From: Macrostomum lignano
Lineage: Eukaryota
Direction of reading: 5' to 3'
Length of the DNA: 64,000 nt
Assembly: GCA_002269645.1 (NCBI GenBank)
Contig: NIVC01000184.1
Coordinates: 1 to 64,000, forward strand
The notes beneath the pieces are model-generated. The model worked only from the letters and a program-made list of their open reading frames with translations. It did not search any database and was not told the DNA's origin. Below, piece by piece: positions 11,755-60,368 of the stretch. Numbering within the stretch: the first letter of the stretch is position 1; each line of letters starts with the position of its first letter. The position numbers were made by a program, and so were the translations under genes.

Positions 11755-12023
11755 GTGTATCTTAGTGGCCAGAGTGTCAGCCTCACAACTGAAATGTCGG
11801 GGTTCGATTCTCGACCCACTCGGAACAATTCGTGTCATTGAGTAAGACACTTAACTCTGCATTGCTTCAGTTCACCCAGCTGTAAAATGGGTGCCAGCAT
11901 TAGCTGGGGTAATCGAGGGTGTGTGTGTGCGACCCCCAGTCCTTGGACTGAACAGCCGTACGCAGCCTTTAGATGCGCCGCGCCAATACCCATTAAAGCA
12001 GGTGTAATAAAATATTAATTATT
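11755..12023 (+). mobile_element. tRNA-derived SINE with CORE-like central domain, copy 1
   Basis: A-box-like tagtggccagagtg and B-box ggttcgattctc. Central gagtaagacacttaac...cttcagttcacccagctgtaaaatggg; tail gcaggtgtaat plus ATT-rich end. Further copies at 30343, 31110 and 56038. Confidence 0.85.
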
Positions 12024-13880: not shown

Positions 13881-14879
13881 CTCCATGACTTTTACGCTTT
13901 TATCCTGATCCTAATCCTTGGGATGACATGCTCGTAAAATTTTTACGAGCATATTGCAAATTGTCACGATATGTCCAGGTAATCAGCAGGCATCCCTCTT
14001 AAAGGGATGAGAGGCTGCTCAAAAGACCTCATCAAGAGCACGATTTGGCCAGTCCCTCTCTCCGGACTCCTAATCATCTTATACTTAACGCCAGTTCTCT
14101 CAGTCAGTCAAAGTACGAGTAACTCAAGCACTCAGCACGAAAAGCTTCCGTTGTTAAATCCAAAAGACCAAATTCTTCCAGAACTAATCTCCATTCCAAT
14201 CAGTAATTTCGTAACTTAATTATCTTTATTTTCCCAATAGGCTGGAACGGGTCTGAAAGTCCCATAATTTGCCCGAGAGGGACAAGTCCTCCAATATCAG
14301 TGTTGGCCAAGAGGGAAAAATTGCCACGCAGCTGAGGGGATTCATAATCCATTATTGGGCGCAATCAGGAAGGTTGGCTGGTTCTAATTTTGTCTCCCAG
14401 GAGTCATCCTCGCCAGTCTTGTGTGCGCGCGGGAGGGCGAGCCGCTATTGAAGCTTTTAAAACCTGTTGCTGAGAGAGAGGGGGGCCTTTACGTGAAAAA
14501 AAATACATTGACACTTCAAACTCGTCTTGCCTTTCGCGCTACAGTCCCACTGCTTGTCTGCTGACTGACGCTGAGAAAGATCACGGATGATCTGTGGGGG
14601 GAGAGGCGCTTTCACGAGATCCAACTTTCGCATCGCCTTAAATTTCAGAAGCGAATTTTTTGTTTAATTAATTAAGTAGCTAAGATTTTCATAAACTATG
14701 CCTAAACTGGCGAAGTTTAGGCGTATGCGAGAGGTTGCTTAACTTTAGTGAATGTTATTAAATTTAGGTCTTGTGAAACTTAAGTCTTAAGACTCGTTTA
14801 CACTGCTATTATATGAGGCAAGAGAAATTTTAGTCGCCAATCTTTCTGAGTCATCAATGCTTTCTCATTGCGTAGAGCG

Positions 14880-15290
14880 AACTTATTGTCGCCTAAATTT
14901 ATCGCTGTAGTGTGCTTGAGCCCCCTCCAGGGAAAAATCCGTAGTGAGGAATTCCCTTTTTGCCTCTCCGGTGTCGAAAATGCAGAGCACTTCATCTGTG
15001 AATGCTCCACCTTTACTCAGGACAGGCTCACGTACCTCGGCACAAATTCAGACTTTTCCTGTGTTTTTATGATCGATGAATCTCTGCTAGCTCGTCCGCC
15101 ACCTAAGGGCTAATCGGGCGAGCGATCATCCACCTGCATGGACTCTCCGGAGGGACACGTACTGGCACCACGGCGGATCTCCCTGCCAGGGGTTAGCGGA
15201 ATGGGCGTCAACGCCTTCCCGCCCGCTGTATCCGGATGCCCGGAACCCCCTGCAGCTGAGTCAAGTCAGACCAAGTGCTTGAGCTCCTAA
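14880..15290 (+). mobile_element. LINE 3'-end remnant (ORF2 C-terminal zinc-knuckle region plus 3' UTR), copy 1
   Basis: FPFCLSGVENAEHFICECSTFTQDRLTYLG is the CxxC...E..EH...C...R motif typical of I/LOA/R1-group LINEs. The 3' part is shared with 23510-23880. Confidence 0.7.
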
Positions 15291-17547: not shown

Positions 17548-18861
17548 TCAAGCAGTTGTAGTGACGATGTCCGCGGCTGCAGCCGGCGTGTTGACGCTGC
17601 GCAGAGCCACCGTCTCGTCCTGTTGCCGTGTTGGCTGGCGACCGCACTGGCGACCGCACAGTTCCGTGACTCGATCCAGCTTGACTAGGCGCGATAGATC
17701 CTGGCGAAACTTGCGATTCGAGATGCTGTAGATGAATATATTGATGAAGCTGTCAAATAGTGTGGCAAACTTCGACATGTGGACGATGATGGCGTCGATA
17801 TTTCTGTCGGGTATGCGGTCCTCGAGGATTTTGCTGACAAACAAAGGAAATTCCAGGACGAGAAAGGTGACGCACAGTACGATCACAAGCAGATTGCCTC
17901 TTGAGGCCTGCTGCTCCGCTGCAGACTGCTGCTGCTGGCCCCCGTGACTCGCCGATATTGTTGCCGGGTTTGCTTTCTGCTTCTTCAAAGCTTGCTTTAG
18001 CCGCCTGTGCCTGCGCAGGCCAAGCATGATGCAGCAGCTGAAGATGCAGACAGTCAGGATGGGCCCGCCAGTCTGGAACACCAGCAGAGTGGCGATCTGG
18101 TAGGCAACTTTAAACCCGCTGTAGTGCTGCCTGCGAAGTCGGAACTCCAGCGAGTCGAGCGAATAGATCGCAGCGTTGCGATCGCAGGCGACGCAGCTGA
18201 AGTGGATGACCCGCGGCAGGGAGATCAGGAAAGAAGCGGCCACAACTGCCACAATGATGGCGTGGACCCTAGCCACACTAGTGAAGACCTTCACTGGGTT
18301 CATAGCTCGGCACACCGCCTCGTAGCGAAACGTCGAGATGACCACGATAATCCAGTTGCGAGCAATATGGAAGCAAGTCTGCAACACAATCAACAGGTTG
18401 ATGGCCAGACAAAAGAAGATGCTTGGTCCCAAGCCGGGGAATGAGATGGCCGAGCTAAACAGGCAATACTCAGTGATGTGGTACATCAGGAAGAAAAAAT
18501 GAAATAATATCTCAATTAGTGACAGCGACTTCAGCAACAGAACCACAATGCGCTGCGTTAGAGCCGCTCCACGCTCCTGCTTCCTGAAAATAATAAACGA
18601 AAGCGTGTTGTTGACTATGTTCAGTGCGTTAACGATGCAGAACAATGTCGAATAGGGACGGATGCTGTTGGCGAAATAACAGTTCCGCTGCTGAATCTCG
18701 GAGCAGAAATCCTTGGTGCCAAGGCAGAGCAGCGGGTTGAGCCAGCCGGGCCAGAAAAGCCAGCTGTGCCGGCTCTGCAGTGAGGACTGGTTGCCCGAGC
18801 AATAAGCGGCGCTTGAGTTGCCAGGTGGTCCCTGGCTGATATTCAGAACTGGGCACGCCAT
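17548..18861 (-). CDS. Class A (rhodopsin-like) orphan GPCR, 437 aa, uninterrupted ORF; PROF1/Rho-L-like
   Basis: Seven hydrophobic segments and N-terminal N-x-S sites. TM3 RNWIIVVISTFRY, TM4 SLPR, TM5 GGP, TM6 LVIVLCVTFLVLEFP, TM7 DSFINIFIYSISNRKFR. Confidence 0.92.
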   Translation of the reverse strand: MACPVLNISQGPPGNSSAAYCSGNQSSLQSRHSWLFWPGWLNPLLCLGTKDFCSEIQQRNCYFANSIRPYSTLFCIVNALNIVNNTLSFIIFRKQERGAALTQRIVVLLLKSLSLIEILFHFFFLMYHITEYCLFSSAISFPGLGPSIFFCLAINLLIVLQTCFHIARNWIIVVISTFRYEAVCRAMNPVKVFTSVARVHAIIVAVVAASFLISLPRVIHFSCVACDRNAAIYSLDSLEFRLRRQHYSGFKVAYQIATLLVFQTGGPILTVCIFSCCIMLGLRRHRRLKQALKKQKANPATISASHGGQQQQSAAEQQASRGNLLVIVLCVTFLVLEFPLFVSKILEDRIPDRNIDAIIVHMSKFATLFDSFINIFIYSISNRKFRQDLSRLVKLDRVTELCGRQCGRQPTRQQDETVALRSVNTPAAAADIVTTTA

Positions 18862-20895: not shown

Positions 20896-21137
20896 GATAT
20901 ATTTCGTAAATAAAGGTAAATATCAACATGAAGTATTATTTGAGTTGCCGATGCATTTCGTCCATTTGCATTAGGACATCGTCATAATGCATGCCTGACA
21001 TGCCTGACATGCCTGACGATGTCCTAATGCAAATGGACGAAATGCATCGGCAACTCAAATAATACTTCATGTTGATATTTACCTTTATTTATCTACTCTT
21101 CATCAAGCGAGCCACTTTACCTGATATATTTCGTAAA
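20896..21137. mobile_element. PLE-derived inverted pLTR-like insertion: perfect 78-bp inverted arms bounded by a 15-bp direct repeat
   Basis: 20907-20984 is the exact reverse complement of 21014-21091. The loop holds atgcctgac x3 (20991-21017). gatatatttcgtaaa occurs at 20896-20910 and 21123-21137. Confidence 0.75.
21009..21052 (+). ncRNA. Minimal type I hammerhead ribozyme motif (PLE-type)
   Basis: CTGACGA (21013-19), T, stem II GTCC/taatgcaaat/GGAC, GAAA, palindromic stem III TGCA, TC cleavage site, then GGC. Stem I is imperfect. Confidence 0.75.
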
Positions 21138-24108: not shown

Positions 24109-25304
24109 TCACACCTCTTCGGTTATATCTGACGTTTCTCTTCGCGTGTTACCAATTCTAACGCTTGCAAGAGGTACCAAATCAGCAGCTTCATGAGCCT
24201 CAGCAGGCATCTCTGGGACAGCTGCTCTTCCATCAGTATCTGGAGTCCGGTTCCGCCCTCGATCAGCCGATCTGCCTCTCAGCCAACACGGTAGTCGACG
24301 TCTTATGACGCGCTTAAACTCCCGGTTGCTCAGGTAGTACACAAGGATGTTGAAGGTGGAGTCAACGCAGGTTAGCAGGTTGGTTGTGTAGCCAAGCAGG
24401 TGCAGTCGAGTCCTCATTGGGTCGATCACTTTCAGTAGAGTCGGTATCTCACACGTGAGAAACACAGCGCACAGTACAATAACCAGCCTAGTGCCAGACT
24501 GATGCCTGTGCCGACCTTCGAAACCTTCGCCGCGTTCGCGGCAGTTTCGATCGCGGCTCTGCATCGACTTGCGCGACCGTCTCTGTCTGTAGAGAATATG
24601 GCACAGGCAGATGCTAAACACTAGGAGCAGCATCACCGGCCAACATTCTGAGCCAGGAAGAGAATAAGTCCCAGGTAGAGTATCCGATAGAGCTGCGTGT
24701 CACTCAGGTTGCTGTCAATATGAGTCACCTGTTTCTCAAACGAGCAAACCACTATGCTGAACTCCAGGCTGCGAGGCAGGGCAACCATTAGGCAGACAGC
24801 TACCAGGCAGCAACTTTTCAAACGCAGATGACCAGAAAAAAGGCAGGAGCGAACGCTCGGGACAGATGCAGAGCAGTATCGATAGTAGCTGATAATGACA
24901 ACCATCCAGTTGCGAATCAGGTGACAGGCCGTCAGCAGCACGATTGACACCACAATGCTGGCCGCGACTATCCGAGCTTCTAGAAGAGTTCTCATTTCCA
25001 GGCGGTTGGTCTCCATCAGAAGGAAAAGCAACTGATGCGAGGCGAACATCAGCTGAAAAAGGACCTCCGCAACGGATAGATACATGAGGATGCGGTTGAA
25101 CTGATTGTTCGGCTTCATCCAACGAAACACTGAACAGCACAGGCTGTTCAACACGCAGTTGAGCATTGGTAAGCAGATCATGAATATCTTGTAGGCCTTC
25201 AAACCAAACAGGTCGTTCAGGTGTGACGTATTCGATCTGGTGGCATTTTCGCACTCGTGCGACGAGTTTGACAGTAGAATGATGCGCTTCGTAGCGGCAA
25301 GCAT
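24109..25304 (-). CDS. Class A orphan GPCR, paralogue of 17548-18861; about 398 aa after correcting a 1-nt frameshift at 24638-24639
   Basis: ATG at 25304 (MLAATKR..). RNWMVVIISYYRY, ALPR, LVIVLCAVFLTCEIP, DSTFNILVYYLSNREFK. The two track ORFs join as ...AQNVG[P]VMLLLVFS if one C is restored. Confidence 0.88.
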
Positions 25305-26214
25305 GAGTTTAGGATGTCGAGTAAGGTATGGCAGAATCAATGAGTCCAAAGGCAAATCTCTTAGGAAATAATGTATTATTATATTGAGAAGCGCGGAGCA
25401 CGTCTCTTCGAAACTCTTTTTCCCAATCGAAATAAATCAAATTGGAGAAGTACCGAATTAAGGCTTAGGAGAGCTGATATCAAATGTTAGCCAAGACCGT
25501 CCCTGTTTGCTTCTCCAGCTCTTGTTTTTAGCCCCGCCCAGTTTTCCTTGGGGCTTTTGCCAATTCTTTCCACGAAACGAATCAAAGCCGGATGGAGAGG
25601 CAGGAAATTTGCCTAAGCAAAGCCAATGAGAGGGCGCGCTCAGCGGGGATCTGGCCGGGTCTGTATGGATGGGATGGTGAAGCATGACTTGCCCCCATCA
25701 TCGGTCTGCCGCTCTCTCCACTGCTTCAGCACTGTTGGCTTTGCTATTTACCATCTCTATAGAGTCCTGACAATGAGAGATGTAGAAGGACATGGCAACA
25801 AGCAAAAAGTAGAGCCCATATTTTTTATATTAGCGAAGTGCTATGAAATGATTTTCTTTTAAGTTAGAAAACTGAGTTGCTTGAAAGAAAAACTGAAAGT
25901 GCTCAAGAAGCAACAGATACCAGTAAGACGTTAATATGTTATTACATCAGGTTGTCACTTATGATACAGAAGGTAGATAACGAAATGATCGTAATATTTT
26001 AATCTGAAAGCGCTTGATTTTTTTGTAATTGCGTGCAAAATAAGCATGGCTGTTGGGTTCACAGATACGAGCGTACATCTTACTGGAGAAAAGTCTCTTG
26101 GACTTATTGGTTTCGCCATGCCAAGCATGCTTGGAGCCAACGCATACAGAATCTTGTAATATCATATCATGCAATATACTGAAGGAAGCCTGCCTATCCG
26201 CACTTACCTATACC

Positions 26215-27689: not shown

Positions 27690-28269
27690 CAGGGGCGTCG
27701 CCATGGATTTTATGGTGGGGGGGGGACAAAGCCAAGAATTCACCATGTACATGTACATAACTAAATTTCTAAATTTCCATTATTTTGAGAATCGTGTTGT
27801 CAGCGCTCATTTTAGCGCCGCAGGCACTCATTTTAGCGCCGCAGGCACTCATTTTAGCGCCGCAGGTACTCATGTTAGCGCCGCAGGCACTCATGTTAGC
27901 GCCGAAGGCACTCATTTTAGCTCAGAAGGCACTCATTTTAGCGCCGAAGGCACTCATTTTAGCGCCGCAGGTACTCATTTTAGCTCAGAAGGCACTCATT
28001 TTAGCGCCGCAGGCACTCATTTTAGCGCCGCAGGTACTCATTTTAGCGCTGCAGGCACTCATTTTAGCGCCGCAGGCACTCATTTTAGCGCCGCAGGCAC
28101 TCATTTAGCGCAGAAGGCGCTGTATTTTGCCGCCCTGAAAAAAATTATTGATTACCACAACGAGACACAAGATGGGGTGGGGGGACAAAGTATTGGCATG
28201 TCCCCCCCATAACTTTTACTGGGGTAGGGGACATTTCCCCCCTGTCTCCCCCCGGTGGCGACGCGCCTA
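27690..28269 (+). mobile_element. Non-autonomous hAT-type element (MITE) with an internal 21-bp array of about 15 copies
   Basis: 14-bp TIRs CAGGGGCGTCGCCA / TGGCGACGCGCCTA (12/14 match). 8-bp TSD gttggtgc (27682-89) and gttggcgc (28270-77). Internal unit gcgccgcaggcactcatttta. Confidence 0.85.
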
Positions 28270-28279
28270 GTTGGCGCGT

Positions 28280-28600
28280 TGCAAGCCGAAATTCCGGCTA
28301 GTTGCTATCGTGCGGCAAAGTCGTCCGCAGCGGGGTCCCCCTTCGGATAGGTGAGCCTGTCCTAAGTAAAGGCTAGGCATTCACAGATAACGTTCTTTGC
28401 ATTCTCAACACCGGAGAGGCAGAATGGGCAATCCTCTATGCGGATTTTCTTTCGGGGTTCCACCTTAGAGACACCCTTGTTAGAGCCGTCTAAGCAGTTG
28501 TGATGCCTGATGCAGCAGACACTTTCATATATGCATAGCCGCTTGACTGTCAGAGTGGAGGATGATCCCACAGACCAGGACCAGTCGGACCCTTAGCTAG
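28280..28600 (-). mobile_element. LINE 3'-end remnant, copy 3
   Basis: RIEDCPFCLSGVENAKNVICECLAFT*DRLTYP; same motif as copy 1 with the CPFC intact. Confidence 0.7.
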
Positions 28601-30342: not shown

Positions 30343-30632
30343 TAATGATTGATTACACCTGCCCTTAATGGGCCAGATGTGCAACCGACAGCTCAGCTGC
30401 AGCTATTGCGCGGCGCATCTGAAGGCTGCGTACGGCTGTTCAGTCCAAGGACTGGGGGTCGCCACACACAGCCTCAATTACCCCAGCTAATGCTGGCACC
30501 CATTTTACAGCTGGCTGAACTGAAGCAATGCAGAGTTAAGTGTCTTGCTCAAGGACACAAATTATTCTGAGTGGTCGAGAATCGAACCCCCGACTTTTCA
30601 GTCGTGAGTCGACGCTGTAACCACATAAGCTT
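30343..30632 (-). mobile_element. CORE-like tRNA-SINE, copy 2 (most complete)
   Basis: The reverse complement has B box ggttcgattctc, gtgtccttgagcaagacacttaac, ccagctgtaaaatgggtgccagc and the tail gcaggtgtaatc. Confidence 0.85.
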
Positions 30633-31109
30633 CAATCCCTATGGATCCCTACTATAGATATTATATACCTAGTACTGTATACTACAGTATATTCCCAATT
30701 GAATGGGAAGTTATATATGGGAAAAAATCGAGCAGTTGTTTTTCTACACTCAATATCGCACGAGTGCCCACAACAGGCATTCACACTCGCACATTTGCAA
30801 GCTGCGCGTAGAATCCGGAAGTGGCTTATATAAATCAACTCTGTCGCAGACCTGGCAGCCTTCTTTTTCTGTCAGTTAATTTGTTTTAGTTAAAAGTGCA
30901 ACTTTAGCCTTCTGTCCCCACAGTGTATAACCAGTAGTTAAACTGCAGCTCACTGATCGCTCAGCTGTTTTTGCCGAGCGTTAAGTTTGGCTCTCACGCG
31001 TTGGCTCTTCCGGGAAATTTTACAGCATGTGGCTTTTCAGTTATTGATAAATAATTGCAATATCATCAACAGAACTCTTGACTCGCATTTATTATAACTT
31101 AGCTAGATT

Positions 31110-31368
31110 TTTAGCCTCCGCATAGCTACAGAGACTGAAGGGTTGGGGGTTCGCACTCGGAAGAATTTTTGTACTTGAGCAAGAGTTCACCCAGCTGCAA
31201 AATGTGTGCCAGCATTAGCTAGGGTACTTGAGGATTTGTGTACGTCGACCCCCCAGTCCTTGGACTGAAAGCCCATACGCAGCCTTCAGATGCGCCGCGC
31301 AATAGCTGCGGCTGACGAGCTGTCGGTTACACATCTGTCCGTGGGCAGGTGTAATCAATTATTATTAG
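31110..31368 (+). mobile_element. CORE-like tRNA-SINE, copy 3 (internal deletions), head-to-head with copy 2
   Basis: gttcacccagctgcaaaatgtgtgccagcattagct...ccagtccttggactgaa...gcaggtgtaatcaatttattatt. Confidence 0.8.
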
Positions 31369-39759: not shown

Positions 39760-42700
39760 AGTAGGAGAGGGTAGGGAGAGAGAAGTTGAGTGGATAGAGA
39801 GAGTGTGAGAGTAGAGCGGAAGAAGTAGAGTGGATAGAGAAGGAGAGTACAGAGAGAGAGAGAAGTAGAGTGGATAGAGAGGAGGAGAGGGTAGTGAAAG
39901 AGAAGTAGAGTGGATAGAAAGGGAGAGAGTAGAGATAGAGACAGAGAGAGAAGTAGCATGGATAGAAAGGGAGAGAGTAGAGATAGAGACAGAGAGAGAA
40001 GTAGCATGGATAGAAAGGGAGAGAGTAGAGATAGAGACAGAGAGAGAAGTAGCATGGATAGAAAGGGAGAGAGTAGAGATAGAGACAGAGAGAGAAGTAG
40101 CATGGATAGAAAGGGAGAGAGTAGAGATAGAGACAGAGAGAGAAGTAGCATGGATAGAAAGGGAGAGAGTAGAGATAGAGACAGAGAGAGAAGTAGCATG
40201 GATAGAAAGGGAGAGAGTAGAGATAGAGACAGAGAGAGAAGTAGCATGGATAGAAAGGGAGAGAGTAGAGATAGAGACAGAGAGAGAAGTAGCATGGATA
40301 GAAAGGGAGAGAGTAGAGATAGAGACAGAGAGAGAAGTAGCATGGATAGAAAGGGAGAGAGTAGAGATAGAGACAGAGAGAGAAGTAGCATGGATAGAAA
40401 GGGAGAGAGTAGAGATAGAGACAGAGAGAGAAGTAGCATGGATAGAAAGGGAGAGAGTAGAGATAGAGACAGAGAGAGAAGTAGCATGTATAGAGAGGGA
40501 GAGAGTAGAGATAGAGACAGAGAGAGAAGTAGCATGGCTAGAAAGGGAGAGAGTAGAGATAGAGACAGAGAGAGAAGTAGCATGTATAGAGAGGGAGAGA
40601 GTAGAGATAGAGACAGAGAGAGAAGTAGCATGTATAGAGAGGGAGAGAGTAGAGATAGAGACAGAGAGAGAAGTAGCATGGATAGAAAGGGAGAGAGTAG
40701 AGATAGAGACAGAGAGAGAAGTAGCATGGATAGAAAGGGAGAGAGTAGAGATAGAGACAGAGAGAGAAGTAGCATGGATAGAAAGGGAGAGAGTAGAGAT
40801 AGAGACAGAGAGAGAAGTAGCATGGATATAAAGGGAGAGAGTAGAGATAGAGACAGAGAGAGAAGTAGCATGGATAGAAAGGGAGAGAGTAGAGATAGAG
40901 ACAGAGAGAGAAGTAGCATGGCTAGAAAGGGAGAGAGTAGAGATAGAGACAGAGAGAGAAGTAGCATGGATAGAAAGGGAGAGAGTAGAGATAGAGACAG
41001 AGAGAGAAGTAGCATGTATAGAGAGGGAGAGAGTAGAGATAGAGACAGAGAGAGAAGTAGCATGGCTAGAAAGGGAGAGAGTAGAGATAGAGACAGAGAG
41101 AGAAGTAGCATGTATAGAGAGGGAGAGAGTAGAGATAGAGACAGAGAGAGAAGTAGCATGTATAGAGAGGGAGAGAGTAGAGATAGAGACAGAGAGAGAA
41201 GTAGCATGGATAGAAAGGGAGAGAGTAGAGATAGAGACAGAGAAGTAGCATGGATAGAAAGGGAGAGAGTAGAGATAGAGACCGAGAGAGAAGTAGCATG
41301 GATAGAAAGGGAGAGAGTAGAGATAGAGACAGAGAGAGAAGTAGCATGGATAGAAAGGGAGAGAGTAGAGATAGAGACAGAGAGAGAAATAGCATGGATA
41401 GAAAGGGAGAGAGTAGAGATAGAGACAGAGAGAGAAGTAGCATGGATAGAAAGGGAGAGAGTAGAGATAGAGACAAAGAGAGATGTAGCATGGATAGAAA
41501 GGGAGAGAGTAGAGATAGAGACAAAGAGAGATGTAGCATGGATAGAAAGGGAGAGAGTAGAGATAGAGACAGAGAGAGAAGTAGCATGGCTAGAAAGGGA
41601 GAGAGTAGAGATAGAGACAGAGAGAGAAGTAGCATGGATAGAAAGGGAGAGAGTAGAGATAGAGACAGAGAGAGAAGTAGCATGGATAGAAAGGGAGAGA
41701 GTAGAGATAGAGACAGAGAGAGAAGTAGCATGGATAGAAAGGGAGAGAGTAGAGATAGAGACAGAGAGAGAAGTAGCATGGATAGAAAGGGAGAGAGTAG
41801 AGATAGAGACAGAGAGAGAAGTAGCATGGCTAGAAAGGGAGAGAGTAGAGATAGAGACAGAGAGAGAAGTAGCATGTATAGAGAGGGAGAGAGTAGAGAT
41901 AGAGACAGAGAGAGAAGTAGCATGTATAGAGAGGGAGAGAGTAGAGATAGAGACAGAGAGAGAAGTAGCATGGATAGAAAGGGAGAGAGTAGAGATAGAG
42001 ACAGAGAAGTAGCATGGATAGAAAGGGAGAGAGTAGAGATAGAGACAGAGAGAGAAGTAGCATGGATAGAAAGGGAGAGAGTAGAGATAGAGACAGAGAG
42101 AGAAGTAGCATGGATAGAAAGGGAGAGAGTAGAGATAGAGACAGAGAGAGAAGTAGCATGGCTAGAAAGGGAGAGAGTAGAGATAGAGACAGAGAGAGAA
42201 GTAGCATGGCTAGAAAGGGAGAGAGTAGAGATAGAGACAGAGAGAGAAGTAGCATGGATAGAAAGGGAGAGAGTAGAGATAGAGACAGAGAGAGAAGTAG
42301 CATGTATAGAGAGGGAGAGAGTAGAGATAGAGACAGAGAGAGAAGTAGCATGGCTAGAAAGGGAGAGAGTAGAGATAGAGACAGAGAGAGAAGTAGCATG
42401 TATAGAGAGGGAGAGAGTAGAGATAGAGACAGAGAGAGAAGTAGCATGGATAGAAAGGGAGAGAGTAGAGATAGAGACAGAGAGAGAAGTAGCATGGATA
42501 GAAAGGGAGAGAGTAGAGATAGAGACAGAGAGAGAAGTAGCATGGATAGAAAGGGAGAGAGTAGAGATAGAGACAGAGAGAGAAGTAGCATGGCTAGAAA
42601 GGGAGAGAGTAGAGATAGAGACAGAGAGAGAAGTAGCATGTATAGAGAGGGAGAGAGTAGAGATAGAGACAGAGAGAGAAGTAGCATGTATAGAGAGGGA

Positions 42701-43190
42701 GAGAGTAGAGATAGAGACAGAGAGAGAAGTAGCATGGATAGAAAGGGAGAGAGTAGAGATAGAGACAGAGAAGTAGCATGGATAGAAAGGGAGAGAGTAG
42801 AGATAGAGACAGAGAGAGAAGTAGCATGGATAGAAAGGGAGAGAGTAGAGATAGAGACAGAGAGAGAAGTAGCATGGATAGAAAGGGAGAGAGTAGAGAT
42901 AGAGACAGAGAGAGAAGTAGCATGGATAGAAAGGGAGAGAGTAGAGATAGAGACAGAGAGAGAAGTAGCATGTATAGAAAGGGAGAGAGTAGAGATAGAG
43001 ACAGAGAGAGAAGTAGCATGGATAGAAAGGGAGAGAGTAGAGATAGAGACAGAGAGAGAAGTAGCATGGATAGAAAGGGAGAGAGTAGAGATAGAGACAG
43101 AGAGAGAAGTAGCATGGATAGAAAGGGAGAGAGTAGAGATAGAGACAGAGAGAGAAGTAGCATGGATAGAGAGGGAGAAACAAGAAGAGA
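39760..43190 (+). repeat. Intronic 48-bp purine-rich satellite, about 70 copies
   Basis: Unit atggatagaaagggagagagtagagatagagacagagagagaagtagc; 44-bp variants near 41237, 42001 and 42765. Confidence 0.97.
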
Positions 43191-43307
43191 GGGAGAGTAA
43201 ATAAACAATTGCTGAGAGTAAAAGCTAAAAGTAAATTTTTTTAAAAGCAGTGCAGTAAGTAGGAAAATAAACGTCAACAAAAACATAAAAATAAAATTTT
43301 CTTTCTA

Positions 43308-43345
43308 GCCAACGCGTTTCGTCAAACACAAGACGTCGTTAGGGC
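43308..43345 (-). ncRNA. Hammerhead-like motif (PLE-type) with a G5-to-A core change
   Basis: GCC-CTAACGA-C-GTC/ttgtgttt/GAC-GAAA-CGCG-TT-GGC. Stems I, II and palindromic III are all complementary. Confidence 0.6.
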
Positions 43346-43437
43346 AAATTCAACTAACCTTAATTCACAACACCAATATATTCAAGCAAAACAAACTGTA
43401 CAGTCCAAATGCGGGTCAAAACAGTCCCGGTAGAATT

Positions 43438-43611
43438 TCAGAAGTGCCAAGCAAGCTGCACATTCAAGTTGGGTTTGTGCATTCTGATATAAGAAGCTTC
43501 AATAATCTTAAGCTTATGGTCAAATTTGCACCCATCCAGCACTTTAAAGAGCTGAATCGGTTCACTGTCAAAACATTTTTTACAAACAAGCAGATGGTCA
43601 TTAATCGCAGA
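43438..43611 (-). pseudogene. PLE GIY-YIG endonuclease C-terminal fragment
   Basis: SAINDHLLVCKKCFDSEPIQLFKVLDGCKFDHKLKIIEASYIRMHKPNLNVQLAWHF* matches the PLE pattern SAI..H...C....F..L......L.I.EA..I...KP.LN.Q. No start codon, so absent from the ORF track. Confidence 0.85.
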
Positions 43612-43698
43612 CTGATATACTGTTTTGACCCGCCTTTGGACTGTTTTGTTTGTTTTGCTTAAATATATTGGTGTTGTGAATTAAGGTTAGTTGAATTT

Positions 43699-43736
43699 GC
43701 CCTAACGACGTCTTGTGTTTGACGAAACGCATTAGC
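43699..43736 (+). ncRNA. Second, more degenerate hammerhead-like motif in the inverted arm
   Basis: GCC-CTAACGA-C-GTC/ttgtgttt/GAC-GAAA-CGCA-TT-AGC; two further G-to-A changes disrupt stems III and I. Confidence 0.5.
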
Positions 43737-44411
43737 TAGAAAGAAAATTTTATTTTTATGACTTTGTTGACGTTTATTTTCCTACTGGTAGAGCATCAGA
43801 GGAGGAGGGAGTTAATGCACATCTACTAGTATTGTTGCCCATTCTTACACTCGTATCTGTCCAGGCAAATCGTCAGATTAATGATATGGTATGCAATTTT
43901 CTATTTGAAAGTTCATCAGAAATTTGAGCTAAATGTAGTCAAATACTGTATCGTCATAGTCTGTTCTGTTACGTTGTTATTAATAACGTTATATAGATAT
44001 GATCTATCTATTAAAAGTATGATTTTATCCGAGCCAATATAGCAGCAGGTTAGACACCTCATAATTCTCTATGCCTATGCGGTGCGCCCAGATGACAGAT
44101 GATAGCCACTTGCATGGTTGGCTAGTCATAAATAATCCACAATCCAAGCCCCAGCGGGCAGATCCGCTTCTGGTTCTTATCAGGCACCACCCGGGCTCCC
44201 TCCCACTGTGGCATAATCAATTAATACAATATCTTAGATATTTGAAGGGGAGAGTGATTGTTCGAGTGTGTGTGTGTGCGCTAGATGCATTCTCTGTACT
44301 ATATATCTGTGGCACTTATATTATTGTGCTTATTGTTAGTTGGATAGTAAACATACTGTTGCTGAATAGTCTGTTTTGTGTCTTGTTTCATTTTTATGTG
44401 CATCAATAGGT

Positions 44412-47086: not shown

Positions 47087-48882
47087 CAGAAGCGTCGCCA
47101 TGGATTTTATGGTGGGGAGGGGGAGAAAGCCAAGAAAATTCCTACATGTACATGACTAAATTCCTATATGTCCATTTTTTGCGAATTAGTGTTTTCAGCG
47201 CTCATTTTAGCGCCGCAGGCACTCATGTTAGCGCCGCAGACACTCATTTTAGCGCCGCAGGCACTCATGTTAGCGCCGCAGGCACTCATTTTAGCGCCGC
47301 AGGCACTCATTTTAGCGCTGCAGGCACTCATGTTAGCGCTGCAGGCACTCATTTTAGCGCCGCAGGCACTCATTTTAGCGTCGCAGGCACTCATGTTAGC
47401 GCCGCAGGCACTCATTTTAGCGCCGCAGGCACTCATTTTAGCGCCGCAGGCACTCATGTTAGCGCCGCAGGCACTCATTTTAGCGCCGCAGGCAGTCATG
47501 TTAGCGCCGCAGGCACTCATTTTAGCGCCGCAGACACTCATTTTAGCGCCGCAGGCAGTCATTTTAGCGCCGCAGGCACTCATGTTAGCGCCGCAGGCAC
47601 TCATGTTAGCGCCGCAGGCACTCATGTTAGCGCCGCAGGCACTCATGTTAGCGCCGCAGGCACTCATGTTAGCGCCGCAGGCACTCATGTTAGCGCCGCA
47701 GGCACTCATGTTAGCGCCGCAGGCACTCATGTTAGCGCCGCAGGCACTCATGTTAGCGCCGCAGGCACTCATGTTAGCGCCGCAGGCACTCATGTTAGCG
47801 CCGCAGGCACTCATGTTAGCGCCGCAGGCACTCATTTTAGCGCCGCAGGCATTCATGTTAGCGCCGCAGGCATTCATGTTAGCGCCGCAGGCACTCATGT
47901 TAGCGCCGCAGGCACTCATGTTAGCGCCGCAGGCACTCATGTTAGCGCCGCAGGCACTCATGTTAGCGCCGCAGGCACTCATGTTAGCGCCGCAGACACT
48001 CATGTTAGCGCCGCAGACACTCATTTTAGCGCCGCAGGCACTCATGTTAGCGCCGCAGGCATTCATGTTAGCGCCGCAGACACTCATGTTAGCGCCGCAG
48101 GCACTCATGTTAGCGCCGCAGGCACTCATGTTAGCGCCGCAGACACTCATGTTAGCGCCGCAGACACTCATGTTAGCGCCGCAGACACTCATGTTAGCGC
48201 CGCAGGCACTCATGTTAGCGCCGCAGGCACTCATGTTAGCGCCGCAGACACTCATGTTAGCGCCGCAGGCACTCATGTTAGCGCCGCAGGCACTCATGTT
48301 AGCGCCGCAGACACTCATGTTAGCGCCGCAGGCACTCATGTTAGCGCCGCAGGCACTCATGTTAGCGCCGCAGGCACTCATGTTAGCGCCGCAGACACTC
48401 ATGTTAGCGCCGCAGGCACTCATGTTAGCGCCGCAGACACTCATGTTAGCGCCGCAGACACTCATGTTAGCGCCGCAGGCACTCATGTTAGCGCCGCAGG
48501 CATTCATGTTAGCGCCGCAGACACTCATGTTAGCGCCGCAGGCACTCATGTTAGCGCCGCAGGCACTCATGTTAGCGCCGCAGACACTCATGTTAGCGCC
48601 GCAGACACTCATGTTAGCGCCGCAGACACTCATGTTAGCGCCGCAGGCACTCATGTTAGCGCCGCAGGCACTCATGTTAGCGCCGCAGACACTCATGTTA
48701 GCGCCGCAGGCACTCATGTTAGCGCCGCAGGCACTCATGTTAGCGCCGCAGACACTCATGTTAGCGCCGCAGGCACTCATGTTAGCGCCGCAGGCACTCA
48801 TGTTAGCGCCGCAGGCACTCATGTTAGCGCCGCAGACACTCATGTTAGCGCCGCAGGCACTCATGTTAGCGCCGCAGGCACT
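47087..48882 (+). mobile_element. Second copy of the hAT-type MITE; right end missing; 21-bp array expanded to about 80 copies
   Basis: The left end CAGAAGCGTCGCCATGGATTTTATGGTGGGG...aaagccaagaa...tacatgtacat matches 27690 onwards. Array 47197-48882. Confidence 0.85.
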
Positions 48883-50959: not shown

Positions 50960-51705
50960 ATACGTGAATGGCTGAGATGGAGACGTGAAGAGTTAGATGG
51001 AGAGTGAAGGGTGAGATCGAGGAGTGAAAGAGTGAGACAGAGAATGAAGGGTGAGATGGAGAGTGAAGGGTGAGCATGGGAGAGTGAAGGGTGAGATCGA
51101 GGAGTGAAGAGTGAGACAGAGAATGAAGGGTGAGATGGAGAGTGAAGGGTGAGATGGAGAGTGAAGGCGAGAGATGGAGATTGAAGGGTGAATGGAGAGT
51201 GAAGGGTGAGATGGAGGGTGAAGGTGAGATGGAGAGTTAAGGGTGAGATGGAGAGTGAAGGGTGAGATGGAGAGTGAAGGGTGAGATGAGAGTTAAGGGT
51301 GAGATGGAGAGTGAAGCGGTGAGATGAAGAGTTGAAGGTTAAGATGGAGGCGTAAAGAGTGAGATGGAGAGTTAAGCGGGTGAGATGAATAGTGAAGGGT
51401 GAGATGGAGAGTGAAGGGTGAGATGGAGAGTGAAGGGTGAATGAATAGCAAGGTTAAGATTAGAGAGTAAGGGTGAGATGGAGTGGAGCGTGTGAAGGGT
51501 GAGATGAATAGTGAAGGGTTAAAGATGGAGAGTTAAGGGTGAGATGGAGAGTGAAGGGTGAGATGGAGAGTGAAGGGTGAGATGAAGAGTGAAGGTTAAG
51601 ATGGAGAGTGAAGGGTGAGATGGAGAGTGAAGAGTGAGATCGAGAGTAAAGGATAAGATGGAGAGTGTAGGGTGAGATGGAGAGTAAAGGGTGAGATAAA
51701 GACGG
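50960..51705 (+). repeat. 19-bp minisatellite (gagagtgaagggtgagatg), left arm of an inverted pair
   Basis: Degenerate tandem units. Confidence 0.88.
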
Positions 51706-52319
51706 AAGGAGACGTAAATTGTGGGACTGCCAGTACTAGTATGATATTTCATTTTCACATTTTGAAGGCCATGCTGGATGTGCCGTATAGGTAATAAAGA
51801 ATCCGAAATCTTCCCCCTAAAAGCATGAATCGCTTCCATTTGCAAGGTTTCCCCCGGCCTTCCATCCCTCTATCTCTGTTCCTTGGTCTTAGGCAGAGGA
51901 ACTGCGGCTGAAACTGCTAATTAAAATTTCCCTAAAAACCCTCACTTAGCAGTCTTTGCCCCACAGACAAGAGTCATGTCTTGTGCCTTCTATCTTTTAC
52001 CTCTGTCTCCTTACCTTCACAGTTCTTTTTGAATTCTTACCGTCTTTTACTGGGGATCAAGCTAATTGCGACCAGTTCCTTAGTCTCTCTCTCTCTCTCT
52101 CTTAGGCTGGCCTTAGTCGTTAGAAAGAAATGAACTGAAAATTTTTATTTGCTTGGTTGGTGCGTCTGTAATAAAAAAGCGCCTATAGTGATGAATGCAT
52201 ATTCTTACAGCGGAATCATTATTGTACGAGTGCAATTTTTTTTATTTTGTTCCCTGCTATCATTGCTCTACGATGTCACAGTGTACTTCCTTGCTTTCTA
52301 TTGTTCTCCAGTCTCTCAT

Positions 52320-52990
52320 CATTCACTCCCCATCTCACCCTTTACCATCCATCTTAAACCTTCACTCTTCATCTCACCCTTCACTATCCATCTCACCCTT
52401 TACCCTCCATCTTAACCTTCACTCTTCATCTCACCCTTCACTCTCCATCTCACCCTTCACTCTCCATCTCACCCTTCACTCTCCATCTCACCCTTCACTC
52501 TCCATCTCACCCTTCACTCTCAATCTCACCATTCACTCCCAATCTCACCCTTTACTCTCCATCTCACCCTACACTTTCCATCTCACCCTTTACCATCCAT
52601 CTTAAACCTTCACTCTTCATCTCACCCTTCACTATCCATCTCACCCTTTACCCTCTATCTCACCCTTCACTCTTCATCTCACCCTTCACTCTTCATCTCA
52701 CCCTTCACTCTCCATCTCACCTTCACTCTCCATCTCACCCTTCATTCTCCATCTCACCCTTCATTCTCCATCTCACCTTCACTCTCCATCTCACCCTTCA
52801 TTCTCCATCTCACCTTCACTCTCCATCTCACCCTTCATTCTCCGTCTTACTCTTCCCTCCTTGATCTCACCATTTACCCTCCATCTGACCCTTCACTCTC
52901 CATCTCACCCTTCACTCTCCATCTTACACTTCACTCTCTATCTTACCCTTCACCCTCTATCTCATCCTTCACTCCCTCACCTTTCACTCT
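52320..52990 (-). repeat. Same 19-bp minisatellite in reverse orientation (catctcacccttcactctc), right arm
   Basis: Reverse complement of the left-arm unit; shares rare variants with it. Confidence 0.88.
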
Positions 52991-59600: not shown

Positions 59601-60368
59601 GCCATTCTAATCTCTCCCTGTCTCCCTCTCATTGCCATTCTAATCTCTCTCTGTCTCCCTCTCATTGCCATTCTAACCTCTCTCTGTCTCCCTCTCATTC
59701 CCATTCTAATCTCTCTCTGTCTCCCTCTCATTGCCATTCTAACCTCTCTCTGTCTCCCTCTCATTCCCATTCTAATCTCTCTCTGTCTCCCTCTCATTCC
59801 CATTCTAACCTCTCTCTGTCTCCCTCTCATTCCCATTCTAACCTCTCTCTGTCTCCCTCTCATTCCCATTCTAACCTCTCTCTGTCTCCCTCTCACCCCC
59901 ATTCTAACCTCTCTCTGTCTCCCTCTCATTCCCATTCTAACCTCTCTCTGTCTCCCTCTTACCCCCATTCTAACCTCTCTCTGTCTCCCTCTCATTCCCA
60001 TTCTAACCTCTCTCTGTCTCCCTCTCATTCCCATTCTAACCTCTCTCTGTGTCCCTCTCATTGCCATTCTAATCTCTCTCTGTCTCCCTCTCATTCCCAT
60101 TCTAACCTCTCTCTGTCTCCCTCTCATTCCCATTCTAATCTCTCTCTGTCTCCCTCTCATTGCCATTCTAACCTCTCTCTGTCTCCCTCTCATTCCCATT
60201 CTAATCTCTCTCTGTCTCCCTCTCATTCCCATTCTAACCTCTCTCTGTCTCCCTCTCATTGCCATTCTAATCTCTCTCTGTCTCCCTCTCATTCCCATTC
60301 TAATCTCTCTCTGTCTCCCTCTCATTGCCATTCTAACCTCTCTCTGTCTCCCTCTCACCCCCATTCTA
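56650..60368 (+). repeat. 33-bp pyrimidine-rich satellite (ctctctctgtctccctctcattcccattctaaY), about 112 copies
   Basis: Tandem units; 11-aa periodic ORFs. Confidence 0.97.

What the first reader, a model, noticed from the sequence alone, without database searches (positions are those of the whole stretch)
20896..21137. Perfect 78-bp hairpin insertion that encodes an intact-core hammerhead ribozyme
Seen: zero-mismatch 78-bp arms, a 15-bp flanking direct repeat (TSD-like), and a loop with atgcctgac x3 whose third copy supplies the core. The right arm reads C-CTGACGA-T-GTCC(taatgcaaat)GGAC-GAAA-TGCA-TC-GGC. The left arm carries the antisense copy lacking C3. No ORF. Known: minimal type I hammerheads with an extra base after A9 and a short palindromic stem III (dimer-active) are characteristic of Penelope-like pLTRs and retrozymes, and PLEs often give inverted 5' duplications. 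Inference: a very young, about 230-bp, protein-free PLE-mobilised ribozyme element between two GPCR genes. Its own antisense arm could sequester the ribozyme or make a long dsRNA/siRNA precursor. Predicted cleavage is after C21048 (AUC). Caveat: stem I pairs only with a bulge (ATGC/GGCA), or needs one more C.
Basis: partly seen in the sequence, partly recalled or inferred. Interest (0 to 1): 0.8.

Follow-up and report, generated by a model that had tools for sequence, protein, structure and literature searches.

The report
Truncated Penelope-like retroelement insertion with hammerhead
A 227-bp insertion in a flatworm genome looks like a dead, head-to-head double copy of the tail end of a Penelope-like retrotransposon; it carries a recognisable but probably crippled hammerhead ribozyme motif, so it is an ordinary kind of thing preserved unusually cleanly.

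Summary
There are two 78-nt arms with 100% complementarity, a 29-nt spacer and a perfect 15-bp flanking direct repeat, and no ORF.

The hammerhead reading is largely right at the level of the motif:
- All core boxes are present (CUGACGA, GAAA, U-C17).
- Three hallmarks that the literature lists for Penelope-like-element (PLE) minimal hammerheads are also present: an extra U after A9, a G10.1-C11.1 pair, and a palindromic AUGCAU helix III.
- A relaxed descriptor hits only this site in the window and nothing in 400 simulated windows.

Against it, no Rfam hammerhead model matches, and helix I is defective. The mirror copy lacks C3. A read-through RNA would fold into a -141 kcal/mol hairpin that buries the motif.

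The right arm carries a 31-nt extension before the direct repeat. This matches the published PLE 'tail' (30-40 bp, at one end only) next to a head-to-head inverted, 5'-truncated copy with a target-site duplication.

Best reading: a young PLE-machinery insertion that was dead on arrival, not a self-standing 230-bp mobile ribozyme element. No second copy and no PLE ORF could be found with the data available. It is a new member of a known kind, of modest interest.

The parts
20896..20910 (.). Left copy of the 15-bp target-site duplication GATATATTTCGTAAA (12/15 A+T). Its last 4 nt (TAAA) are also the first 4 nt of the left arm, which is microhomology at the junction.
20907..20984 (-). Inverted, tail-less, 5'-truncated copy. 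Read on the minus strand it is identical to 21014-21091. Its hammerhead-like motif (20984 down to about 20946) starts at U4 and is preceded by A instead of C3, so its core is incomplete.
20985..21013 (+). 29-nt asymmetric spacer and junction: TAATGC + (ATGCCTGAC)x2 + ATGCC. It contains the palindromes ATGCAT (20987-20992) and GCATGC (20989-20994). Its last base, C21013, supplies C3 of the plus-strand hammerhead.
21014..21091 (+). Direct copy (right arm), 78 nt.
21010..21052 (+). Hammerhead-like motif. Helix I 5' strand is 21010-21012. C3 is 21013 and U4-A9 are 21014-21019. The extra U is 21020. Helix II is 21021-21024 paired with 21035-21038, with a 10-nt loop. GAAA is 21039-21042. The palindromic helix III ATGCAT is 21042-21047. 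C17 is 21048, with predicted cleavage 3' of it. Helix I 3' strand is 21049-21052.
   Evidence: features compared with PMC4209133 and with the Poseidon_Ac HHR
21092..21122 (+). 31-nt extension found only on the direct copy (TCTACTCTTCATCAAGCGAGCCACTTTACCT). I interpret it as the PLE 'tail', the stretch between two reverse-transcription start sites.
   Evidence: literature: 30-40 bp tail at one end (PMC8557442), 31-bp tail (PMC3846280), tail = sequence between two RT start sites (PMC11167929)
21123..21137 (.). Right copy of the 15-bp target-site duplication.

Best explanation
The unit 20911-21122 is a recent retrotransposition product that was dead on arrival. [quoted passage not shown] That RNA was either an autonomous PLE pseudo-LTR end or a non-autonomous derivative, and it carried a type I minimal hammerhead (HHR) about 40-75 nt from its 3' end.

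Inferred mechanism:
1. The GIY-YIG endonuclease made staggered cuts 15 bp apart in an AT-rich target. This accounts for the 15-bp target-site duplication (TSD).
2. Both exposed 3' ends primed reverse transcription.
3. The bottom strand started at the outer start site, giving the direct copy with its 31-nt tail.
4. The top strand started at the inner start site, helped by 4 nt of TAAA/UUUA microhomology, giving the inverted copy without a tail.
5. Both cDNAs stopped within or just upstream of the hammerhead core. They were joined head-to-head across a short junction that holds small palindromes and a slipped 9-nt repeat.

What is shown: the anatomy, the motif, and their non-random nature. What is inferred: the order of events and the identity of the enzyme.

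In this copy the hammerhead is most likely inactive:
- Helix I is reduced to one contiguous pair.
- There is no second intact copy on the same strand to form the dimer that the palindromic helix III implies.
- Any read-through transcript would fold into a 78-bp perfect duplex. Such a transcript is more likely to be a substrate for small-RNA pathways than a ribozyme.
For: (1) Motif:
- Complete CUGANGA, GAAA and U-H boxes; a 4-bp helix II closed by G10.1-C11.1; an extra U between A9 and G10.1; a palindromic AUGCAU at helix III.
- The last three are the features PMC4209133 names as emerging independently of the search descriptor in PLE min-HHRs.
- That paper also reports dual min-HHRs 100-700 bp apart on opposite strands in a flatworm.

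(2) Non-randomness:
- The relaxed descriptor gives 1 hit in 128 kb of window sequence and 0 in 400 simulated windows.
- The same descriptor recovers the experimentally studied Poseidon_Ac HHR. That HHR shares the extra U (A9-U-G10.1 = AUG), a palindromic helix III, C17 and a short (3-bp) helix I.

(3) Architecture:
- A head-to-head inverted 5'-truncated copy, a 31-nt extension at one end only, and a TSD.
[quoted passage not shown] (4) Mechanism precedent (PMC11167929): purified Poseidon protein cleaves and extends both DNA strands, prefers AT-rich targets, and starts reverse transcription at two sites whose interval is the tail.

(5) Youth: 0 mismatches in 78 + 15 compared positions.

(6) Host: the neighbouring GPCR is closest to one from the flatworm Macrostomum lignano. 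PLEs and PLE hammerheads are documented in flatworms.
Against: - No Rfam hammerhead covariance model matches, even at E<=10 on a 91-nt query.
- Helix I has 1 contiguous pair, against 4-5 bp in typical min-HHRs.
- Helix II is 4 bp, not the 6-8 bp of PLE min-HHRs.
- The drawn double-hammerhead scores only -9.1 kcal/mol against an MFE of -32.5. Poseidon_Ac scores -17.7 against -33.6.
- No PLE RT/GIY-YIG coding remnant was found in the 64-kb window or in the one M. lignano locus fetched, by tblastn with Poseidon_Ac.
- No second copy of the arm was found in the window or in the metagenome, viral or prokaryotic collections, which are unlikely to hold this animal.
- The 18-codon open frame ATG21069-21122 has no relative.
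- The case therefore rests on one locus plus published descriptions. The family itself was not seen.
Confidence: 0.65

Rival explanations
1. The whole ~212-227-bp hairpin-plus-tail unit is itself a small, non-coding, PLE-mobilised element (retrozyme or SINE-like). It is copied as a unit, and the hairpin is part of the master copy.
For: It has a TSD, no ORF and a hammerhead motif of the PLE/retrozyme type. Non-autonomous PLE derivatives and retrozymes exist (PMC7229834; bioRxiv 10.64898/2026.07.22.740005).
Against: - No second copy in 64 kb.
- No tandem arrangement, which defines non-LTR retrozymes (one search lists no array here).
- An RNA with a -141 kcal/mol perfect duplex is a poor template for reverse transcription and cannot fold its ribozyme.
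- Perfect arm identity and the one-sided tail are what formation at integration predicts.
- The inverted copy breaks off inside the ribozyme core (it lacks C3), as expected for truncation rather than design.
Confidence: 0.12
2. A local DNA repair or replication event, such as snap-back synthesis or template switching, produced an inverted duplication of pre-existing local sequence. No mobile element is involved, and the hammerhead resemblance is chance.
For: There is 4-nt microhomology (TAAA) at the left junction, and the spacer holds small palindromes and a slipped 9-nt repeat. These are features of template-switch repair. There is no other copy and no PLE ORF nearby.
Against: - It does not explain a 15-bp direct duplication 227 bp apart that brackets the structure.
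- It does not explain a 31-nt offset that falls in the published tail range.
- It does not explain a complete hammerhead core with three PLE-specific extras, when chance expectation is below 0.01 per 64-kb window and roughly 4e-5 for this 242-bp interval (my arithmetic).
Confidence: 0.08
3. Assembly or sequencing artefact, such as a fold-back chimeric read or a polishing error.
For: Perfect palindromes are a known artefact class, and PLE structures are known to trouble assemblies (PMC8557442). Raw reads could not be inspected.
Against: - The palindrome is small (185 bp) and internal to unique sequence that is contiguous on both sides.
- Its spacer is asymmetric.
- It has a one-sided 31-nt extension and an exact 15-bp flanking duplication. 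Fold-back chimeras do not produce any of these.
Confidence: 0.05
4. A foldback or MITE-type DNA transposon with 78-bp terminal inverted repeats, or a hairpin-RNA/miRNA gene.
For: It has perfect inverted repeats flanked by a direct repeat. There are Rfam hits to several miRNA precursor models (MIR7723, mir-3927, mir-7883, mir-1791).
Against: - The right direct repeat does not abut the right arm (31-nt gap).
- 15 bp is longer than DNA-transposon TSDs (2-10 bp, general knowledge).
- All miRNA hits are below their gathering scores (72.9 vs 200, 44.3 vs 90, 42.8 vs 50, 36.7 vs 75). They align only generic stem pairs of unrelated taxa, and mir-7883 hits both strands equally.
Confidence: 0.04

Closest known systems
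Minimal type I hammerheads of Penelope-like elements (min-HHR; Cervera & de la Pena 2014, PMC4209133)
   Same: CUGANGA/GAAA/UH core; an unpaired nucleotide between A9 and G10.1; a conserved G10.1-C11.1 pair; a palindromic helix III implying action as a dimer; weak helix I; occurrence in a flatworm; occurrence as two motifs on opposite strands a short distance apart.
   Different: Helix II is 4 bp with a 10-nt loop, where typical min-HHRs have 6-8 bp. Helix I has 1 contiguous pair, where typical min-HHRs have 4-5, D. virilis has 2 and Poseidon_Ac has 3. No family of covarying copies was seen. No Rfam model matches.
Poseidon_Ac (Anolis) PLE hammerhead and insertion mechanism (PMC11167929)
   Same: An extra U after A9, so that A9-U-G10.1 spells AUG; a palindromic helix III (ACGU there, AUGCAU here); C17; the HHR lies a short way upstream of the RT start sites; an AT-rich target; a tail equal to the interval between two start sites; both DNA strands used as primers.
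   Different: In Poseidon_Ac the AUG opens the 846-aa ORF. Here it is followed by a stop after two codons (ATG TCC TAA). The distance from cut site to start sites is 43 and 74 nt here, against roughly 85-92 nt to the main site there. There is no sequence similarity outside the core.
Inverted-pLTR PLE insertions of Adineta vaga and other animals (PMC3846280, PMC8557442)
   Same: A head-to-head inverted 5'-truncated copy; a 31-bp tail on one of the inverted repeats only; a short TSD; small palindromes at the inverted junction.
   Different: Those insertions usually enclose an ORF or at least a full pLTR of about 200 bp. This one is truncated to 78 nt per arm and encloses nothing. The TSD is 15 bp against 8-10 bp.
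Metazoan non-LTR retrozymes and the Schistosoma Sm-alpha hammerhead
   Same: A type I hammerhead with a 4-bp GUCC/GGAC helix II, a CAAAU-containing loop 2 and a 1-bp helix III capped by a palindromic tetraloop. The Sm-alpha sequence is from memory. The general description is in PMC4209133.
   Different: Retrozymes are tandem arrays with an HHR in every unit and a 6-bp helix I with loop-loop contacts. Here there is no tandem array and no proper helix I.

Membership tests
Hammerhead ribozyme (any type) | Conserved core: C3-U4-G5-A6-N7-G8-A9, G12-A13-A14, A15.1-U16.1, H17 not G | tested here: met
   CUGACGA 21013-21019, GAAA 21039-21042, U21047, C21048
Hammerhead ribozyme (any type) | Helix II closed by a G10.1-C11.1 pair | tested here: met
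   GUCC 21021-21024 pairs with GGAC 21035-21038
Hammerhead ribozyme (any type) | Helix I formed by the strands 5' of C3 and 3' of H17 | tested here: not met
   Only C21012-G21049 is contiguous. Two more pairs need G21050 bulged. One extra C before C3 would give 4 bp.
Hammerhead ribozyme (any type) | Match to a curated hammerhead covariance model (Rfam clan) | tested here: not met
   No hammerhead family matched at gathering score on the window, or at E<=10 on 801 nt or 91 nt. I could not run a known PLE min-HHR through the same models as a control, so how well they detect this subtype is unknown.
Hammerhead ribozyme (any type) | Site-specific self-cleavage | not testable with these tools
   Needs in vitro transcription or 5'/3' end mapping.
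PLE-type minimal hammerhead (PMC4209133) | [quoted passage not shown] | tested here: met
   U21020
PLE-type minimal hammerhead (PMC4209133) | Palindromic positions 15.2-16.2 / loop 3 (helix III able to form between two copies) | tested here: met
   ATGCAT 21042-21047 is its own reverse complement.
PLE-type minimal hammerhead (PMC4209133) | Long helix II (6-8 bp) and helix I of 4-5 bp | tested here: not met
   Helix II is 4 bp with a 10-nt loop. Helix I has 1 contiguous bp.
PLE-type minimal hammerhead (PMC4209133) | Belongs to a genomic family of many copies with covariation | not testable with these tools
   The source genome is not available. There is no copy in the window or in the collections searched.
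Penelope-like element insertion | 5'-truncated copy with an adjacent inverted 5'-truncated copy (head-to-head) | tested here: met
   Arms 20907-20984 and 21014-21091; definition in PMC8557442.
Penelope-like element insertion | [quoted passage not shown] | tested here: met
   31 nt, 21092-21122, present only beyond the right arm; PMC8557442, PMC3846280, PMC11167929.
Penelope-like element insertion | Target-site duplication of variable length in an AT-rich target | tested here: met
   15-bp exact duplication, 12/15 A+T; PMC8557442, PMC11167929.
Penelope-like element insertion | Sequence continuity with an element encoding a PLE reverse transcriptase and GIY-YIG endonuclease | tested here: inconclusive
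   tblastn with Poseidon_Ac finds nothing in the window or in L001. The insertion is truncated far short of any ORF, and the source genome could not be searched.
Non-LTR retrozyme | Tandem repeats, each unit with a type I hammerhead | tested here: not met
   No tandem array at 20.9-21.1 kb. There is one intact core on the plus strand and none on the minus strand.
MITE / foldback DNA transposon | TSD directly abutting both terminal inverted repeats | tested here: not met
   The right direct repeat is 31 nt beyond the right arm.
miRNA precursor families hit by Rfam | Score at or above the family gathering threshold | tested here: not met
   72.9 vs 200, 44.3 vs 90, 42.8 vs 50, 36.7 vs 75 bits.

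The most novel reading that the evidence does not exclude
This may be a minimal natural record of the PLE integration reaction seen so far only in vitro. Both target strands prime, one from each of the two reverse-transcription start sites, and the product is frozen as a 212-bp insert. If so, loci like it across the genome would allow the two start sites, the stagger of the endonuclease cuts and the head-to-head joining rule to be read directly from sequence. A more speculative addition is that such perfect PLE-derived hairpins are transcribed and serve the host as hairpin-RNA sources of small RNAs against the parent element.
Probability: 0.12. Interest if true: 0.6.

Novelty: new member of a known kind. 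Interest (0 to 1): 0.35.

Why it matters
PLE hammerheads and PLE inverted/tailed insertions are already described, so this adds no new category. Its value is as a very clean example. Because nothing has mutated, every junction can be read to the base: TSD, inner and outer 3' ends 31 nt apart, 4-nt microhomology, and the head-to-head joint. The picture agrees with the both-strand priming and dual start sites reported for a purified lizard PLE in 2024, but in a flatworm. It also indicates that a PLE lineage was active recently in this macrostomid genome. I found no paper in the searched library linking hammerheads to Macrostomum.

Tried and rejected
- Rfam scans at gathering score and at E<=10 on 64 kb, 801 nt and 91 nt gave no hammerhead. 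They gave only sub-threshold generic miRNA-hairpin hits, which I rejected as a property of any long perfect stem.
- A search for further copies in the window by pattern and by short-word blastn found none.
- Exact-pattern scans found none. I ran two against metagenome contigs, one with a degenerate HHR pattern and one with arm sequence. I ran one each against viral and prokaryotic genome contigs. These collections are unlikely to contain a flatworm.
- I tried to identify the source through the neighbouring GPCR. There was no exact record. The one homologue is from Macrostomum lignano at 64% identity.
- Its contig (L001) has no arm-related sequence. A 14-nt match at L001 12362-12375 has no core boxes around it and I take it as chance. 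No orthologous empty site could be aligned.
- I tested whether ATG21069 to the end of the tail is the start of a PLE ORF, as in A. vaga where the pLTR plus tail encodes the first 22 aa. It is 18 open codons, which is not significant alone. A protein search with the 43-aa ORF found nothing.
- I tried to sample more M. lignano DNA through a retroelement-like ORF of L001. There were no hits.
- Pfam on ten window ORFs found no reverse transcriptase or endonuclease, only a weak 7tm_1 match on the second GPCR.
- tblastn with the published Poseidon_Ac protein against the window and L001 found nothing.
- My first drawing of the dimer had intramolecular helix I and was a pseudoknot, so it could not be scored. 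I redrew it as the domain-swapped double hammerhead.

Full report
**1. The observation**

- Arms 20907-20984 and 21014-21091 are 78 nt long and 100% complementary, 29 nt apart.
- GATATATTTCGTAAA occurs at 20896-20910 and again at 21123-21137. It is the only direct repeat of at least 12 nt in the surrounding kilobase.
- The bases just outside the two copies differ, so the repeat is exactly 15 bp.
- The spacer is TAATGC + ATGCCTGAC + ATGCCTGAC + ATGCC. With the first four bases of the right arm it makes three tandem ATGCCTGAC units.
- The longest ORF touching the unit is 44 aa.
- As RNA, the 242 nt fold at -141 kcal/mol. Shuffles average -44 +/- 4.4, so z = -22.

The left direct repeat overlaps the left arm by 4 nt (TAAA). 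On the right, 31 nt (21092-21122, TCTACTCTTCATCAAGCGAGCCACTTTACCT) lie between the arm and the direct repeat.

**2. Where the window comes from**

- The window is eukaryotic and full of mini- and microsatellites.
- The intronless 437-aa ORF at 17548-18861 (minus strand) has a single database relative. It is a protein from the flatworm Macrostomum lignano that UniRef names a G-protein coupled receptor, at 64% identity.
- The ORFs at 24109-25355 (minus strand) give a weak 7tm_1 match.
- A SINE-like repeat is shared with the M. lignano contig at 83-87% identity.

So the window is from a macrostomid flatworm, probably not the sequenced M. lignano strain. The element does lie between two GPCR-like genes.

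**3. Is the hammerhead real?**

On the plus strand the motif reads as follows:

| Part | Sequence | Coordinates |
|---|---|---|
| Helix I, 5' strand | AUG | 21010-21012 |
| C3 | C | 21013 |
| U4-A9 | UGACGA | 21014-21019 |
| Extra nucleotide | U | 21020 |
| Helix II, 5' strand | GUCC | 21021-21024 |
| Loop 2 | UAAUGCAAAU | 21025-21034 |
| Helix II, 3' strand | GGAC | 21035-21038 |
| G12 to A15.1 | GAAA | 21039-21042 |
| Helix III interior | UGCA | 21043-21046 |
| U16.1 | U | 21047 |
| C17 | C | 21048 |
| Helix I, 3' strand | GGCA | 21049-21052 |

Every invariant core position is present.

I wrote a relaxed descriptor: CUGANGA, 0-1 extra nt, helix II of at least 4 bp closed by G-C with a 3-14-nt loop, GAAA, 0-6 nt, then U and a non-G base. 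Nothing was asked of helix I or of palindromy.
- It hits only this site on the two strands of the window.
- It hits nothing in 400 simulated 64-kb windows with the same dinucleotide make-up. My arithmetic gives about 0.01 expected per window.
- As a positive control, it recovers the hammerhead of Poseidon_Ac. I took that sequence from the supplementary GenBank file of PMC11167929. Its cut site falls 26 nt after the start codon, as that paper states.

Cervera & de la Pena list four features that emerged among PLE minimal hammerheads without being in their descriptor (PMC4209133):
- consensus families with covariation;
- the G10.1-C11.1 pair;
- palindromic 15.2-16.2 / loop 3.

The last three are all present here. 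The first cannot be tested on one copy.

Poseidon_Ac shares the extra U (in both, A9-U-G10.1 spells AUG), a palindromic helix III, C17 and a short helix I of 3 bp. I conclude that the motif derives from a genuine PLE/retrozyme-type hammerhead and is not a chance look-alike.

**4. What speaks against an active ribozyme here**

- No Rfam hammerhead model matches, at gathering score or at E<=10, even when only 91 nt are searched. I could not run a known min-HHR through those models, so their sensitivity to this subtype is unknown.
- Helix I has one contiguous pair (C21012-G21049). Two more pairs need G21050 bulged.
- The drawn double-hammerhead dimer scores -9.1 kcal/mol against an MFE of -32.5. 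Poseidon_Ac scores -17.7 against -33.6, and it cleaves only when its protein is added.
- The palindromic helix III implies a dimer, but the plus strand has only one intact core. The minus-strand copy reads A-UGACGA and lacks C3. PMC11167929 reports that single mutations at C3 or G8 abolish cleavage.
- Any transcript crossing both arms will form the 78-bp duplex.

**5. What the whole structure is**

The published anatomy of PLE insertions matches the unit feature by feature.
- PMC8557442: copies are heavily 5'-truncated. [quoted passage not shown]' [quoted passage not shown] TSD length varies, and HHR motifs lie near the 3' ends.
- PMC11167929: purified Poseidon protein cleaves and extends both strands of an AT-rich target. 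[quoted passage not shown]

Here the direct copy ends 31 nt beyond the point where the inverted copy ends, and the target is 12/15 A+T. The primer end TAAA can pair with UUUA at the inner site. The joint carries ATGCAT and GCATGC palindromes. The hammerhead cut site lies 43 and 74 nt from the two 3' ends.

The simplest account has three steps:
1. One staggered cut is made 15 bp apart.
2. Both 3' ends prime on PLE-type RNA, one at each start site.
3. Both cDNAs abort in or just upstream of the hammerhead and are joined head-to-head.

The anatomy is observed. The sequence of events is inferred from the in vitro work.

**6. Why not a self-standing 230-bp element**

- There is no second copy in the window.
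- There is no tandem array, which defines non-LTR retrozymes.
- A perfect-duplex RNA is a poor template for reverse transcription.
- The inverted copy stops inside the ribozyme core.
- Perfect arm identity together with a one-sided tail is what formation at the moment of integration predicts.

Whether the template was an autonomous PLE or a non-autonomous derivative cannot be told from 110-140 nt. The AUG formed by A9-U-G10.1 opens the ORF in Poseidon_Ac. Here it is followed by UCC UAA in both arms, so the template did not start its ORF there. ATG21069 opens 18 codons to the end of the tail, but that is not significant, and a protein search found no relative.

**7. Other rivals**

- Template-switch repair could explain the microhomology and the junction. 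It does not explain the bracketing 15-bp duplication, the 31-nt offset or the hammerhead.
- An assembly artefact cannot be excluded without reads. However, fold-back chimeras do not create an internal 185-bp palindrome with an asymmetric spacer, a one-sided extension and a TSD.
- A MITE is excluded by the 31-nt gap between the right arm and the right direct repeat.
- The miRNA hits are all below threshold and are generic stem matches.

**8. Limits**

- tblastn with Poseidon_Ac found no PLE coding remnant in the window or in L001.
- The public collections that can be scanned by DNA pattern hold no match.

The family itself has therefore not been seen. The conclusion rests on one locus plus published descriptions, hence confidence 0.65.

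**9. Verdict**

It is best read as a young, truncated, head-to-head insertion with a probably inactive ribozyme, and not as a new small mobile ribozyme element. It is a new member of a known kind. Its interest is modest, resting mainly on how cleanly it preserves the junctions predicted by the 2024 in vitro mechanism.

Noticed in passing
window 21078-21084 and 21116-21122: The 7-mer TTTACCT occurs just upstream of both putative reverse-transcription start sites. It lies 7 nt before the inner end at 21091 and exactly at the outer end at 21122. It could be a start-site signal or chance.
   Followed up: no
window 21019-21027, compared with Poseidon_Ac: In both hammerheads A9, the extra U and G10.1 spell AUG. 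In Poseidon_Ac this is the ORF start codon. Here it is followed by TCC TAA. The conserved 'extra nucleotide' of PLE hammerheads may be tied to a start codon in some lineages.
   Followed up: partly
window 30456-30635 (+), 11756-11935 (-), 31184-31251 (-); L001 12482-12665: A ~180-bp repeat with a tRNA-like segment (…GAATCGAACCC…) is shared between the window and the Macrostomum lignano contig at 83-87% identity. It is probably a tRNA-derived SINE.
   Followed up: partly
window 43258-43786: A ~530-bp unit with 168-nt inverted arms at 95% complementarity and a 193-nt centre sits directly after the large 48-bp minisatellite. It looks like a foldback or MITE-like element. It is unrelated in sequence to the finding.
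   Followed up: no
window 39899-43178, 47201-48882, 56651-60368, 27806-28118: There are very large minisatellite arrays: 48 bp x 69 copies, 21 bp x 80 and 33 bp x 113. The 21-bp unit CTCATGTTAGCGCCGCAGGCA recurs 19 kb away as CTCATTTTAGCGCCGCAGGCA (15 copies). These arrays produce the long spurious ORFs and the strong strand skews in the composition profile.
   Followed up: no
window 50964-51697 and 52314-52974: Two arrays of the same 19-bp unit lie in opposite orientation about 600 bp apart, forming a large imperfect inverted repeat.
   Followed up: no
window 24109-25355 (-): The second GPCR-like gene is split into two overlapping ORFs (24633-25355 and 24109-24636). This suggests a frameshift, a short intron or a pseudogene. 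Only the C-terminal half gives a (weak) 7tm_1 match.
   Followed up: no
window 14850-15110 (+) and 28365-28592 (-): Short ORFs ending in CPFCLS…EHFICEC-like cysteine/histidine patterns resemble the C-terminal zinc knuckle of LINE ORF2 proteins. Pfam gave no hit, so this remains an impression.
   Followed up: partly
L001 11118-11821: A tandem repeat in the M. lignano contig contains CTGAGGATCTGGGAGGCTGGCCCAGAAA, which matches a loose CUGANGA…GAAA regex. It lacks G10.1-C11.1 and a proper GAAA box, so it is not a hammerhead. It shows that box-only searches give false positives.
   Followed up: partly
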